Source: Caecitellus pseudoparvulus
Taxonomy: Eukaryota > Protista > Bigyra: Bicosoecida
Direction of reading: 5' to 3'
Assembly: GCA_965644315.1 (NCBI GenBank)
Contig: CBFFRQ010000089.1
Span: forward strand, 496,001-560,000
DNA: 64,000 nt
In this document: piece after piece, positions 27,726 through 32,538 of the stretch
How the letters are laid out: the number at the start of each line of letters is the position of its first letter
How positions within the stretch are numbered: position 1 is the stretch's first letter
Translations under genes and position numbers: made by a program
The notes under the pieces: model-generated
Seen by the model: only the letters and a program-made list of their open reading frames with translations
Database searches by the model: none
Told to the model about the DNA's origin: nothing

Positions 27726-30700
27726 TCAAGCCTCGGCGGCGGCGGCGCCGGCATCGTCCCAGCCCTGCCCATCATCCTCCCAGTCGTCCTCCTCGTCCTC
27801 CCCATCCATGAGGCCAGCGCTGCGCTGCGCAGCGATGTGCTGGGACATGATTGAGGCGCAGAACAACATGACCATGCGGGGCTTCACCTCCACCAGGTCT
27901 TCCCAGGTACAGAACACGGACGTGCCGATCTTGCGTGCGGCAGAGATGAGGTACTTCACGTTCTGCTCCTTCTCCACGTCGCTGACGCCCTCCGTGACCA
28001 GGCCCCAGTTGATGACTGGGCGCACGGAGCTGACGAGGTGCAGCAGGTACACGCCGTTGGACAGGGAGCTGTCGCGGAAGCTGGAGATGGCGGCGGAGGC
28101 GTCCCCACAGCTCTCCACGACGCGCCCATTGGCCCAGGCGAGGATGTCGCTCTCCTCGGCGCCGAAGCCGTCGAAGGCGACTTGCGACAACACCTTGAAG
28201 GTGTGGAAGCGCATGAGCTGCCAGAGCAGAGACAGAATCTGCTTGGCGCGGCCATCCACAATGTCCAGGCCGCCCACGTTCACCAGGTGGAACTCCATGG
28301 CAGACGCCAACTTGATGATGTAGTTGCCGTTCTCCACGCGGCGGTACCGGTTGTCCTTCGGGTTCTTGTGTGCCCTGCGCCAGTTCACAATGCCCGGCTC
28401 CACAGCCTCCATGATGCGCAGCAGCACCGACCCGTCCCGCATGTCCGCCACTAGGTCGGTGATGGTGAGTCCCGGCACGGCCAGGGACCCAATCCACTGC
28501 CGCAGCATGCGCACCTCCCGAGTGCCTTCCTCGTCCAGGTCCTCTGCCATCTCCGCCAGCTCCTCCGCAACACTGCTGCCGGTGGACTCTGCATCGCTGC
28601 GCGTCAGGCACGGCGACGCCGCAAACAGCATGGCCACGAAGGCGATCTGCGTGCGGGGGATGCCGCCTGTGATGGCGCCGGACGAGAACCACGCTGGCAC
28701 GCCGACGCCAAAGGACGCAGAGAGGATCTCATTGGCCAGTGCCTCCACGTCAGCTTCCGATGCCGCCACTGCAGCGTCCTCCCCAGCAGGCAGCCCCTCG
28801 CTGTACTCAGACGCGACTTGGCGCAGGATGATGGAGAGTGCCACTGCATCCTTGAGCTCCTCCCCCCAGTCCTTCACCTCCCGGTGGGAGCCTGCCGCCT
28901 TGAGCTGGTAGTTCATCCACCGCAGCAACATGGCGGTGGGCTGCACGCCCGCCAAGTCCTTCACCTCCTCCCCGGGCTTCAACAGCACAACCAAGTCGTT
29001 GTTCTTGCGCACGTTGATGCTGGAGAGCAGCGTGTGGCGCCACAGGCTCCACACGGTATCAATGGTGGTCTCAGCATCCCCGCTCTCCACAGCGGTGGCG
29101 ACGGCAGGCACGACGCCCTCCTTGGGCAGGTCCACACCTCCGGCAGCCGCCGTGGACAGCACCAGTTGCAAGTTCTCCCGGGCAGGGTGCGTCACGGCAC
29201 CGGCATCGTCCGTGACCTCCTCCCCCGGTACAGCCTCCAGGTTCAGCACGCGCTCGTCCACGGAGTCTGGGCGCAAAGCGTTGAGTACCTTCGTCAGGAC
29301 GATGCCGTCGCGCAGGGCGGTCAGCAGGGCAGGGGGCTCCGCAGCCAGGTCCAGGGGGATGCCCGGCGCCTCCACACCTGCTGCCTCCAGGGTGGCGTTG
29401 ATGAAGGAAGAGAAAGTGAGCACCTCGTGGGGGTTGGCCGCCTCCACCGCCTCTGTGCCTGGCTCGTGCCACTGGCTCTCCCCGGTCTCGGAGTTGTACC
29501 AGAAGTAGCTGCCACTCTCCTCGTCCAGCACTTGGCTCCACGGGTTGGCTGCCTTGGACGCATCCTCGTCCCCCTCACCCTCCTCGTCGTCTGAGTCCAC
29601 ATCGCCCTCCGTGACCATGCCAGCGACACCCATGCCTGTCGGGTCGTTGAAGGTGCGCTGCCCGGTGACGGTGTTGTACCAGTACGCCCGCCCCGTCTCG
29701 GGGTCCTCCATCTTCTCCCAGTTCCCGTCGTCCCCACCCGTGACGACACCCGTGCCCTCCCCATGCTCTGCCACGTACGCCAGGTGTTCCTCCCAGCCGG
29801 GTGGCTGCGCCCACTGCGTGCGCCCCGTGGGGATGTGGGTGTAGAAGGCGTCGCCATCCTCGTCTTTCTCCTGCCGCCACTCGTACACACCCTCCTTTGC
29901 GTCCTTGACGTTCTTGGCCACCCACACGCGGTTGTGCAGCGCCCAGGCGGGCGGCTCTTCCCACTGTGTCGCGCCGTCCTTCCCTGCGTTGATGTAGAAG
30001 GTGTCCCCTTCATCATCCTGGGCGGCTGTGTACGGATACTTCACTGTGCCCACAGTTGTCACAGGGCGGTCCCACACGCTGTCGCCAGTGGTGGTGTTGG
30101 AGTAGAACATGTCCCCACTGTCGGCGTCTTTGTGCCCCTCCCACAAGTCCCCTGCCTCATCCACGATGGGCAGGTCTGACAAGTCCACATCTGCCAGGTC
30201 GTCCACGCCAGCACCCGAGGCGGCGCCGCCTGCCGACGCAGCAGCAGCTGCTGCCGCCTCCTCCTTGGCCTTGGCTGCAGCGGCCTCTGCCGCCGCCTTG
30301 GCCTTGGCTGCGGCCTCCTTCTTCGCCTTGAGTGCAGCGAGGCGGCCCAGGCGCCCCTTCGTGGCCGTGTCCACCTCCACTTCCTTGCCCTCCATGCCGT
30401 TCATGCGGGCTTTGCGGCCGCCCTTCAGCCACACCCGCTTCTCCTTGACAGCGCGCGCCTGCGCCTCCTGCTCCTCCCGCAGCTTCTTGGCCTTCAAGTA
30501 CTTGATGCGCTCCCGCCGCATGCGCTGGGCAGACTGGATGCGCACTGTGGCAGCCAGCACCTCCTCCTCCGTGCGGCCCAGCTCGCGGGCCTTGTTCTTC
30601 AGCACCTCCTTGCGGGCCTGGCGAATGCGGGCTGTCTCCAGCTTTGCCAAGTACATGCGCACGGTCTTCTGGATCTTGATGGCGGCGACGTTCTCCCGGG

Positions 30701-32538
30701 GCAGCACCGCCTGCAGAGCCTGCAGCCACGTGTCCACCTCTTCCACCGTCCGTGCCATGAACACGTACACGCGGCCAGACACCACCTTCAAGTGGAACTT
30801 CTTGCCCAATTTGCCAGTCTGGGGGTTGCGTGGCGCACCCACCGCGTAGAAAGACAGGAAAGGGATGGACGTGGGCAGCGTGCCAGCCTGGCGCTTCGCC
30901 TTGGACTCGAAGTAGTACAGTTGCCCGTCCTTGACGTTCAGGACGAAGTACCGTGTGCGGTACGCTGACATGAGGGAGTGCAGCATCTTGCTGTTCTTCT
31001 TCTTCAGCACGCCCTCCATGATCACGCCGTCGGCGTCCATGGTCAAGCCAGCGGGCAGCACCAGCTGCTGCATCTGCAGCCGCTGCACCGCCTCGGAGCG
31101 CTCCCGCAGCATTGCTCGCAGACGCCGGAAGGCCTTGAATGCACGCCACGCCGTCTGGATGCGCAGGATGGCCATGATGTGCCCCAGGTGCCGCTTGATG
31201 GTGCTGACCCACAGCGCCGCCTCCTCAGGCGTGTTGGCCAGCAGCTCCATGGTGCGCCCTGTGATAACTTTCACGTCGAAGCGGCGGCCCTCCTTCTTGT
31301 CCGTGTGGTGGTGCACTGCCAGGAACGTTTGGAAGCGCACCTTCTTGATGACGCCCTCCTGCATCGTGCGGGAGCCAGTCCAGAAAAACATGGCTTGGTA
31401 CGTCTGGCTCAACACATAGTACTTCTTGCGCCACCGCACCATGCGGTTGGCGCGCTTCTTGTGCAGCTCGCCCTCGATGATGACGCCTGAGGAAAAGTCC
31501 AGGCCAGCCACCTTGCCTGCCCCAGAGGAGGGGGGGGCGGGGGCCTTGGGCGGCGCGCCAGGCGCAGCAGGCGGCGCTGCAGCGCGCTTCTCATCAGCCG
31601 CCTTCTGGCACTCGGGGTGGCTGGCCACCCATTCTCGCAGGTGCTCTGCAACTTGAGTGTGCCCCTCTTCATTGGCGCTGTCCAGGGGGGTCTTGCCGTC
31701 CTTGGACACGAGCAGGGGGTTCCCCCCCAGCTTCAGCAACATCTTCACAGCATCCAAATGCCCACAGAAGCAAGCGTAGTGCATGGGGCTGTCGCCGTAC
31801 CCATCCTCCAAGTTCACAGACGCGCCATGGTTCAGCAGCCACTCGATGACGTGCACTTTGCCAGTGACACAGGACCGGTGCAGGGCTGTGAAGCCATCCT
31901 GTGCAAGGAGGAGACCAGCGGCGCCAGTGCCAAGCCGCGTTCACACACCAGCGACGCAGCCCGGCGCGGGGCCGCGGCACGCCTCCCACGCCAAGCAGAG
32001 CCTTGCATGCAAGAACAGGAGTGAGAGGCCCCACAGAGCAAGCGCGGGTGGGTCGCAGGTGCAAGCCACGCGTGCACATGTCGACGTGCAGGTGGTATCT
32101 GAAACCCCGCCGACTGCACTGGCGCGAAGAAGGAAGCACTCACGTTGTCGTGCGTGTCGATGTCTGCCCCTGTCTTCAGCAAGGCATCAAGTTCAGCCAA
32201 GTTCTCAGAGAAAGCAGCGTCACTCAGGCGCTGGCCGATCTGTGCACGCCAGGCAAGGAGCTCGGGCTCGTGTTGGCGCCGCAATGGAAATGGGCAGCAG
32301 CAGCTGCAGCCGCTCCAGCTTGCACTGCGACACAATGCTGCAGTACAAGACAGGCAATGGTGCCCTGACACACACACACAAGCTACTAATGGGCAGCTTG
32401 GCGCACTGGCGCAGCTGCATCCACCCACGCGATGCCAGGCCACGCGAGTTGGCATGGTGTGGTGCACTGCTTTGCTTCGGGGCACGAAATCCCGCGCTGA
32501 CTGACACGGCCAGGGGGCAAACGCACCTGCGTAGACAT
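27726..32538 (-). CDS. Multidomain fimbrin/plastin-like protein: ANK - PH - IQ - PH - IQ - IQ - coiled coil - 5xWW - 4xCH; exons 32538-32527, 32239-32144, 31898-27726
   Basis: ANK: DGFTALHRSC..G, YGDSPMHYAC..GH, DGKTPLDSA. PH1: EGELHKK...WRKKYYVL...EEAALW. PH2: EGVLKKK...YRTRYFVL...EEVDTW. IQ: IQTAWR, IQKTVR, IQSAQR. Five WW units. Fimbrin core: LRDGIVLTKVLN...DERVLN, LLRWMNYQL, EGTREVRMLRQWI, VENGNY, LVNVGGLDIVDG, LLWQLMR, ILAWAN, KYLISAARKIG, EDLVEVKPRM. Confidence 0.85.

What the first reader, a model, noticed from the sequence alone, without database searches (positions are those of the whole stretch)
27726..32538. Fimbrin/plastin core with its EF-hand headpiece replaced by ANK-PH-IQ-PH-IQ-IQ-5xWW: a possible membrane-targeted, calmodulin-gated actin bundler
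Seen: one continuous exon (31898-27726) carries ankyrin repeats, two PH domains (~31480-31210 and ~31025-30710), three IQ motifs, a Lys/Ala coiled coil, five WW domains (~30145-29460) and a complete four-CH fimbrin core (~29435-27830). Because the junctions are intron-free and in frame, this is not a gene-model merge. Established: canonical fimbrins/plastins consist of an N-terminal headpiece (EF-hands in animals and fungi) plus ABD1 and ABD2. Inference: Ca2+ control is outsourced to calmodulin through the IQ motifs, the basic PH domains recruit the bundler to phosphoinositide membranes, and the WW array scaffolds Pro-rich partners, for example at a feeding or phagocytic apparatus. I do not know this architecture from described proteins.
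Basis: partly seen in the sequence, partly recalled or inferred. Interest (0 to 1): 0.8.

Follow-up and report, generated by a model that had tools for sequence, protein, structure and literature searches.

The report
Fimbrin-derived membrane–actin linker of stramenopiles
This marine protist gene joins the actin-bundling core of fimbrin to ankyrin, lipid-binding PH, calmodulin-binding IQ and WW modules; it belongs to an old family of non-photosynthetic stramenopiles for which no description was found, and because one of its two actin-binding sites looks remodelled it more likely anchors actin to membranes than bundles it.

Summary
The gene is a 3-exon, 1,426-aa ORF: ANK-PH-IQ-PH-IQ-IQ-5xWW plus a four-CH fimbrin core (PDB E 7e-79; AlphaFold pTM 0.91, fimbrin horseshoe). 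It is no assembly or gene-model artefact: an independent contig spans it, strain differences are 31 synonymous to 2 non-synonymous, and complete transcript-derived orthologues exist. About 25 clusters share the layout and domain order (Cafeteria, Cantina, labyrinthulid-like, uncultured). Five share its intron position, and their cores form one group apart from canonical fimbrins (SH-aLRT 97). The genome also keeps a canonical EF-hand fimbrin. The 'bundler' reading needs changing. The mapped ABD1 actin-contact positions are lost family-wide (F191-equivalent aromatic 4/24 against 73/75 canonical; N213 0/24 against 65/75), and ABD1 diverges about 1.7-fold faster, whereas ABD2 is kept. PH2 has an invariant phosphoinositide motif. 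IQ1 and IQ2 directly follow the PH domains, far from the core, and core-less paralogues exist. Best reading: a phosphoinositide-targeted scaffold holding F-actin mainly through ABD2. Function is untested.

The parts
32527..32538 (-). Exon 1 (4 codons, start ATG at 32538)
   Evidence: GT donor at 32526, in phase; orthologue P0003 starts at an equivalent place
32240..32526 (-). Intron 1 (287 nt, GT..AG)
   Evidence: inferred, no RNA read across it
32144..32239 (-). Exon 2 (32 codons; first ankyrin helix pair)
   Evidence: 53% identical to N-terminus of transcript-derived P0003, E 2e-9
31899..32143 (-). Intron 2 (245 nt, GT..AG), position conserved across the family
   Evidence: an AG acceptor lies directly before the same codon in L005, L008, L009 (Cafeteria), L010, L104
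27726..31898 (-). Exon 3, 1,390 codons plus stop, all domain junctions in one frame
   Evidence: GC3 0.85; 31 synonymous against 2 non-synonymous strain differences
31629..31898 (-). Ankyrin repeats (continued from exon 2)
   Evidence: Pfam Ank E 1e-16
31191..31487 (-). PH1, very basic (20 K/R against 9 D/E); Lys at the position of the usual beta-2 Arg
31110..31172 (-). IQ1, in one continuous helix with the PH1 C-terminal helix
   Evidence: AlphaFold helix 95-147; family consensus is a canonical IQ
30702..31028 (-). PH2 with invariant phosphoinositide-type signature (beta-1 Lys, beta-2 RxR, beta-3 Tyr)
   Evidence: Pfam PH E 1e-21; invariant columns; fold
30627..30689 (-). IQ2, directly after PH2
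   Evidence: Pfam IQ
30492..30554 (-). IQ3 (IQ-like, variable in the family)
30231..30371 (-). Lys/Ala-rich helical linker
   Evidence: sequence; not conserved in sequence
29457..30149 (-). Five WW domains in an acidic region (52 D/E against 15 K/R)
   Evidence: Pfam WW E 8e-24; 2-6 WW in orthologues
28605..29435 (-). ABD1 (CH1 29435-29028, CH2 29003-28605): fimbrin fold kept, actin-contact surface remodelled (His at the F191-equivalent, 29189-29187; loop 29138-29115 lacks the VVNIG-type motif; insertion before helix 3)
27819..28532 (-). ABD2 (CH3 28532-28194, CH4 28166-27819): actin-binding loop and helix-3 motif conserved; auto-inhibitory R594-equivalent kept
27729..27818 (-). Acidic C-terminal tail
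   Evidence: similar acidic tails in family consensus

Best explanation
An ancient fimbrin paralogue of Bigyra-type stramenopiles, fused to an ANK-(PH-IQ)x2-IQ-WWn scaffold, that links F-actin to a phosphoinositide-marked membrane. Shown: the architecture, folds, family and residue pattern. Inferred steps: (1) the basic PH pair, above all PH2, binds PIP2/PIP3-type lipids; (2) calmodulin or a related light chain on the IQ helices stiffens or switches this membrane anchor; (3) the WW array and ankyrin repeats collect Pro-rich and other partners; (4) the core binds one filament through ABD2/CH3, while ABD1 stays folded against CH4 as a structural or inhibitory cap and binds actin weakly or not at all. 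Bundling is left to the canonical EF-hand fimbrin of the same cell. A cortical or feeding-site location is a guess from the lifestyle of the named carriers.
For: Core is fimbrin by sequence and fold. In PLS3, ABD1 contacts actin through loop 184-189, helix 190-194, N213 and H225 (bioRxiv 10.1101/2021.12.01.470822), and F191A lowers bundling but keeps filament binding (PMC9478642). Family against canonical at those places: aromatic at F191 4/24 v 73/75, N213 0/24 v 65/75, H225 0/24 v 57/75; the preceding loop is 7-61 residues (median about 33) v 16-21. The CH3 equivalents stay (aromatic 18/24; L478-equivalent Leu/Ile/Val in 22/24; EN 22/24). Tree distances: ABD1 2.21 in the family v 1.30 in canonical fimbrins; ABD2 1.55 v 1.61. 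The most divergent members match the family profiles only weakly in CH1/CH2. PH2 motif invariant. Canonical paralogue present. Core-less paralogues of the N-terminal module are in the same genome.
Against: No binding data. Tandem-CH/actin interfaces are plastic: only 2 of 9 filamin A contact residues are kept in plastin ABD2 (PMC7244493), so residue loss does not prove loss of binding. ABD1 still folds with high confidence and keeps DER/EN-type motifs. CH2, which does not touch actin, diverged as much as CH1, so part of the signal may be general change rather than a targeted loss. CH3 also departs from canonical at 5 of 44 conserved positions. Many PH domains with basic motifs bind lipids weakly (own knowledge).
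Confidence: 0.55

Rival explanations
1. One reading: a monomeric two-site actin bundler, recruited to phosphoinositide membranes by the PH domains and switched by Ca2+/calmodulin on the IQ motifs.
For: All four CH domains are kept in order over the family, with a fimbrin horseshoe fold (TM 0.84 to 1pxy_B). R594-equivalent kept in 18/24. CH-actin interfaces tolerate sequence change.
Against: Family-wide loss of the ABD1 contact residues and faster ABD1 evolution. IQs are far from the core and tied to the PH domains. A canonical bundler is already present.
Confidence: 0.25
2. A dimeric cross-linker: each chain binds actin through ABD2 only, and the IQ and Lys/Ala helices dimerise, giving a long-spaced alpha-actinin/filamin-like cross-link at the membrane.
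For: Long predicted helices after PH2 and a Lys/Ala-rich helical linker; ABD2 intact.
Against: The linker is not conserved in sequence or length. Lys/Ala-rich helices can be single alpha-helices (own knowledge). No dimer prediction was run.
Confidence: 0.1
3. An IQGAP-like signalling scaffold in which the whole core has become a protein-interaction module and actin binding is minor.
For: The N-terminal module exists without a core in this genome and in Cafeteria. CH2 has 8 new family-specific conserved positions. Some members are divergent in all four CH domains (P0016, P0083).
Against: The CH3 actin-binding loop and helix-3 motif are conserved in most members, and ABD2 diverges no faster than in canonical fimbrins.
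Confidence: 0.09
4. Assembly chimera or merged gene model.
For: A merged model does exist for Cafeteria, but with the upstream myosin gene, not inside this protein.
Against: An independent 40.6-kb contig spans the locus (record 25). One exon. Complete transcript-derived orthologues P0003 and P0192. About 25 clusters with the same layout.
Confidence: 0.01

Closest known systems
Fimbrin/plastin (AtFim1 1PXY, S. pombe Fim1 1RT8, human PLS3 7R94; PMC9478642, PMC10533516)
   Same: Four CH domains as ABD1+ABD2 in the closed horseshoe; 29-31% structural-alignment identity over the core, 43% in ABD2 to 3BYH; CH3 actin-binding loop and CH4 R594-equivalent kept.
   Different: No EF-hand headpiece; about 860-residue ANK-PH-IQ-PH-IQ-IQ-WW5 extension; ABD1 contact residues remodelled; separate group in the tree; coexists with a canonical fimbrin.
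Dictyostelium IqgD and other fimbrin-related multidomain proteins (PMC13628810, PMC13299636)
   Same: Fimbrin-type CH domains recruited into a larger scaffold by domain fusion; cited role in phagocytosis.
   Different: IqgD has only the ABD1 duplex, fused to GRD-RGCt-CT. Here all four CH domains are present, ABD2 is the conserved half, and the partners are ANK, PH, IQ and WW. Different lineage, so presumably an independent fusion (not tested).
Animal IQGAPs (CH-WW-IQ scaffold; PMC13299636 and own knowledge)
   Same: Actin-binding CH plus WW plus IQ motifs in one scaffold.
   Different: IQGAP has a single type-3 CH at the N-terminus, one WW and a RasGAP-related domain; no PH or ankyrin. None of the GAP parts are found here.
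ERM proteins, beta-spectrin, anillin (own knowledge)
   Same: Functional analogy: a lipid-binding module plus one F-actin site linking cortex and membrane.
   Different: No sequence relationship beyond generic PH/CH folds; not tested as members.

Membership tests
Fimbrin/plastin | Four CH domains in two tandem ABDs of fimbrin type | tested here: met
Fimbrin/plastin | Closed horseshoe core with CH1 against CH4 | tested here: met
   AlphaFold pLDDT 92.9, pTM 0.91; Foldseek 1pxy_B E 3e-23, TM 0.84; a prediction, with canonical fimbrins in the alignment
Fimbrin/plastin | N-terminal EF-hand headpiece | tested here: not met
   No EF-hand Pfam hit; WW5 abuts CH1; the canonical paralogue has two EF-hand loops
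Fimbrin/plastin | Conserved ABD1 actin-contact surface (PLS3 F191, N213, H225, loop 184-189) | tested here: not met
   4/24, 0/24, 0/24 against 73/75, 65/75, 57/75; residues
Fimbrin/plastin | Conserved ABD2/CH3 actin-binding loop (PLS3 474-483) and helix 3 | tested here: met
Fimbrin/plastin | Nests among canonical fimbrins in a core tree | tested here: inconclusive
   The family is one side of a branch (SH-aLRT 97, quick tree, unrooted); ABD2 alone needs 2 changes; canonical rows are unnamed metagenomic sequences
Fimbrin/plastin | Bundles F-actin as a monomer | not testable with these tools
   needs co-sedimentation or EM
IQGAP / IqgD | GRD-RGCt-CT region | tested here: not met
   no RasGAP-type hit
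Phosphoinositide-binding PH domains | beta-1 Lys, beta-2 (K/R)xR, beta-3 Tyr signature | tested here: met
   PH2 invariant in 18/18; PH1 has Lys in place of the second Arg in 15/15; motif definition from own knowledge
Phosphoinositide-binding PH domains | Measured lipid binding | not testable with these tools
   needs liposome assay
IQ calmodulin-binding motif | [IL]QxxxRGxxxR consensus | tested here: inconclusive
   IQ2 passes Pfam; this protein lacks the Gly in all three; family IQ1 is canonical in most members

The most novel reading that the evidence does not exclude
A fimbrin in which ABD1 has been turned from a second actin site into a dedicated regulatory cap. Release of the cap at a phosphoinositide- and calmodulin-marked membrane would expose ABD2, which in human plastin binds actin with nanomolar affinity and nucleates filaments when freed. 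The protein would then be a membrane-triggered actin anchor or nucleator of phagotrophic Bigyra: a natural version of the split-domain experiment on plastin allostery.
Probability: 0.17. Interest if true: 0.8.

Novelty: new variant of a known kind. Interest (0 to 1): 0.58.

Why it matters
Fimbrins are described as having a fixed headpiece-plus-four-CH layout (PMC10533516). This family shows the whole core reused in a lipid-, calmodulin- and partner-binding scaffold, kept across lineages as distant as Cafeteria, Cantina and labyrinthulid-like protists. These include abundant marine bacterivores whose actin machinery is almost unstudied (own knowledge), so it is a concrete candidate for a lineage-specific membrane-cortex linker, testable in Cafeteria cultures. 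The asymmetric change (ABD1 remodelled, ABD2 kept) also gives a natural test of current, partly conflicting models of which plastin ABD binds first and how ABD1 inhibits ABD2.

Tried and rejected
Misassembly or gene merge: rejected. Tail of a giant myosin: considered because of the 5,311-aa Cafeteria model KAA0175887.1. Rejected, because another strain's annotation splits the two genes by about 4 kb, a second species has them about 2 kb apart with other ORFs between, the best match of that myosin in this genome is on another contig, and complete transcripts start at the ankyrin repeats. Occurrence in dinoflagellates or chytrids: the 'Symbiodinium sp. KB8' protein is 99.9% identical to the Cafeteria protein, so a contaminant. 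The 'Batrachochytrium' entry is the best family match of the Aplanochytrium fragment and is probably a contaminant too (inference). ESM Atlas by features and by structure gave only generic ankyrin, PH or fimbrin clusters below 0.9. The core-only word search returned one fragment and was uninformative. Literature searches combining fimbrin with WW/stramenopile, Cafeteria, labyrinthulids or PH/IQ/ankyrin found nothing on this protein. The source organism of TSA GECG01 could not be identified. RNA contigs were too short to show the introns. The spliced model was examined exon by exon by reference; the joined protein was not built or searched.
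Full report
Observation. The minus-strand frame 31898-27726 is open for 1,390 codons. Pfam finds ankyrin repeats, two PH domains, an IQ motif, WW domains and four CH domains. 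Family-built HMMs and a motif scan resolve five WW and three IQ-type motifs. The four-CH part matches Arabidopsis fimbrin at E 7e-79, S. pombe fimbrin at 2e-69 and human PLS3 at 2e-64, while alpha-actinin/spectrin ABDs reach 5e-11 at best. An AlphaFold model of the core (pLDDT 92.9, pTM 0.91) superposes on the closed fimbrin core (1pxy_B, TM 0.84). A model of the N-terminal module shows two PH folds; the first runs in one helix into IQ1 and the second is followed at once by the IQ2 helix. Two short upstream exons (32538-32527, 32239-32144) with GT-AG introns give 1,426 aa. Exon 2 is 53% identical to the N-terminus of a transcript-derived orthologue. The exons were handled separately; the joined protein was not searched.

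It is a real gene. A 40.6-kb contig from another study spans the whole locus with only scattered substitutions (record 25). Of 33 coding differences in the four runs, 31 are synonymous. Contigs from a metatranscriptome and a probable RNA run bridge the WW5-CH1 junction (records 5 and 13). DNA in those libraries cannot be excluded, and no RNA contig crosses an intron.

It is a family. A search with the PH-IQ-PH-IQ region returned 19 clusters, this one included, all with CH and WW domains. A profile search added more distant members. Domain order is the same in all full-length members, with 2-6 WW domains; several models lack the first domains, probably because their first exons were not called. 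Named carriers are Cafeteria roenbergensis (KAA0159361.1, KAA0164179.1), Cantina marsupialis (transcript, 1,194 aa, full architecture), an EukProt transcript GECG01008975.1 (complete ORF, 1,406 aa), and an N-terminal fragment from Aplanochytrium stocchinoi. This points to Bigyra (Opalozoa and Sagenista; classification from own knowledge). No oomycete, ochrophyte or genuine non-stramenopile name came up, but only 30 clusters were looked up and most have no name, so the range is not settled. The second intron sits at the same codon in five other loci, Cafeteria included. In a tree of 22 family cores and 40 canonical fimbrin cores from metagenomes, the family is one side of a branch with SH-aLRT 97 (quick, unrooted; P0016 and P0083 left out as long branches). 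ABD2 alone does not fully recover this. The genome holds a second, canonical fimbrin with two EF-hand loops (G000:C96), so this gene is an extra paralogue and not a replacement.

The two actin-binding halves differ. In human plastin, CH1 contacts actin through loop 184-189, the start of helix 190-206, N213 and H225 (bioRxiv 10.1101/2021.12.01.470822). F191A lowers bundling but leaves filament binding intact (PMC9478642). In 75 canonical cores the F191 position is aromatic in 73, N213 is kept in 65 and H225 in 57. In 24 family cores the numbers are 4, 0 and 0. The loop before helix 3 grows from 16-21 to a median of about 33 residues, and a near-invariant Gly becomes Asp or Glu in 22 of 24. This protein has His at the F191 position. 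In CH3 the matching aromatic, the EN motif and the 474-483 loop (PMC7244493) are kept. Mean identity to canonical fimbrins is about 27% for CH1 and CH2 and 36-38% for CH3 and CH4, whereas canonical fimbrins are 44-53% alike in all four. Tree distances in ABD1 are 1.7 times those of canonical fimbrins; in ABD2 they are about equal. The CH4 residue needed for auto-inhibition (R594) is kept in 18 of 24. Caution: CH-actin interfaces are plastic, CH2 changed as much as CH1, and ABD1 still folds, so loss of ABD1 binding is likely but not shown.

The N-terminal module. PH2 has the beta-1 Lys, beta-2 RxR and beta-3 Tyr typical of phosphoinositide-binding PH domains, invariant in 18 of 18 sequences. 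PH1 is as basic but has Lys for the second Arg. The IQ motifs are about 350 residues from CH1, behind a Lys/Ala linker and the acidic WW array. In plastins the calcium switch is a helix right next to CH1 (PMC10533516), so the IQ motifs are not placed to copy it; control of the membrane anchor is the simpler reading. The module also occurs without a fimbrin core: three paralogues in this genome (ANK-PH-IQ-PH-WW3 on C32, PH-IQ-WW3 on C90, ANK-PH-IQ on C61) and Cafeteria KAA0166289.1. The WW triplets of the C32 and C90 genes are closest to this protein (41-43% identity), which suggests duplication with loss of the core in this lineage.

How it most likely works. The PH pair docks on phosphoinositide-rich membrane. 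Calmodulin or a light chain on the IQ helices stiffens or switches the anchor. Ankyrin and WW domains gather partners. The core holds one filament through ABD2, with ABD1 as a cap (0.55). Rivals are a true monomeric bundler (0.25), a dimeric ABD2 cross-linker (0.10) and a scaffold with little actin binding (0.09). All functional steps are inferred.

Comparison and novelty. By descent the core is fimbrin. The protein fails two defining features of canonical fimbrins (headpiece, ABD1 surface), so it is best called fimbrin-derived. The nearest precedent for such a fusion is Dictyostelium IqgD, which took ABD1 only and joined it to an IQGAP tail (PMC13628810, PMC13299636). Animal IQGAPs combine CH, WW and IQ in a different layout. 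Databases label the members 'plastin-1', 'FIM5', 'Calmodulin' or hypothetical. No paper on the family was found in the open-access library, which lacks most subscription papers. The scan's notes hold no other fimbrin entry and one note on a core-less ANK-PH-IQ-WW scaffold in this genome. Verdict: a real, conserved, apparently undescribed variant of a known kind, built wholly from known domains, with a testable functional shift. Interest 0.58.

Noticed in passing
L004/L005 1-3883 and L009 1-5740 (Cafeteria): A myosin-IQ-RCC1 gene lies directly upstream, same strand, in two divergent species. In one Cafeteria strain the two are merged into a 5,311-aa model (KAA0175887.1). The best match in this genome is unlinked (G000:C30). 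It may be leftover synteny or a functional actomyosin pair.
   Followed up: partly
window 27331-26033; L004/L005 10298-11122; L011 14555-15631: A 14-3-3 gene is the downstream neighbour here and in two other species (opposite orientation in L004/L005); the penicillin-amidase gene upstream is shared with L011.
   Followed up: partly
L101 2798-4990 (+), L103 5220-3319 (-), L102 2803-7773 (+): Three core-less paralogues of the N-terminal module in this genome (ANK-PH-IQ-PH-WW3; PH-IQ-WW3; ANK-PH-IQ with a long low-complexity tail), each with relatives in other assemblies.
   Followed up: partly
L002 686-3099 (G000:C96): Canonical EF-hand fimbrin with an insertion of about 35 residues in CH4; a full-length transcript-like copy is L014.
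   Followed up: partly
P0024, P0063 (NCBI 'Symbiodinium sp. KB8'); P0083 (NCBI 'Batrachochytrium salamandrivorans' GCA_021556665.1): Public entries that look like stramenopile contamination: P0024 is 99.9% identical to Cafeteria; P0063 shares a 90% cluster with a protein 99% identical to the L101 paralogue; P0083 is the best family match of the Aplanochytrium fragment.
   Followed up: partly
window 16874-15393 (-): A separate 493-aa WW-PH protein 11 kb downstream (Pfam WW and PH); relation to this family not tested.
   Followed up: no
P0052/P0190 (ENA contigs): Family members whose ORF ends after CH2, without ABD2; probably an intron or truncation, not checked.
   Followed up: no
L041, L091: Canonical-type fimbrins with a 315-341-residue N-terminal extension that contains EF-hand motifs, grouping together in the tree.
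   Followed up: no
G000 whole genome: At least 94 matches to RCC1-like repeats on many contigs, several in very long open frames.
   Followed up: no
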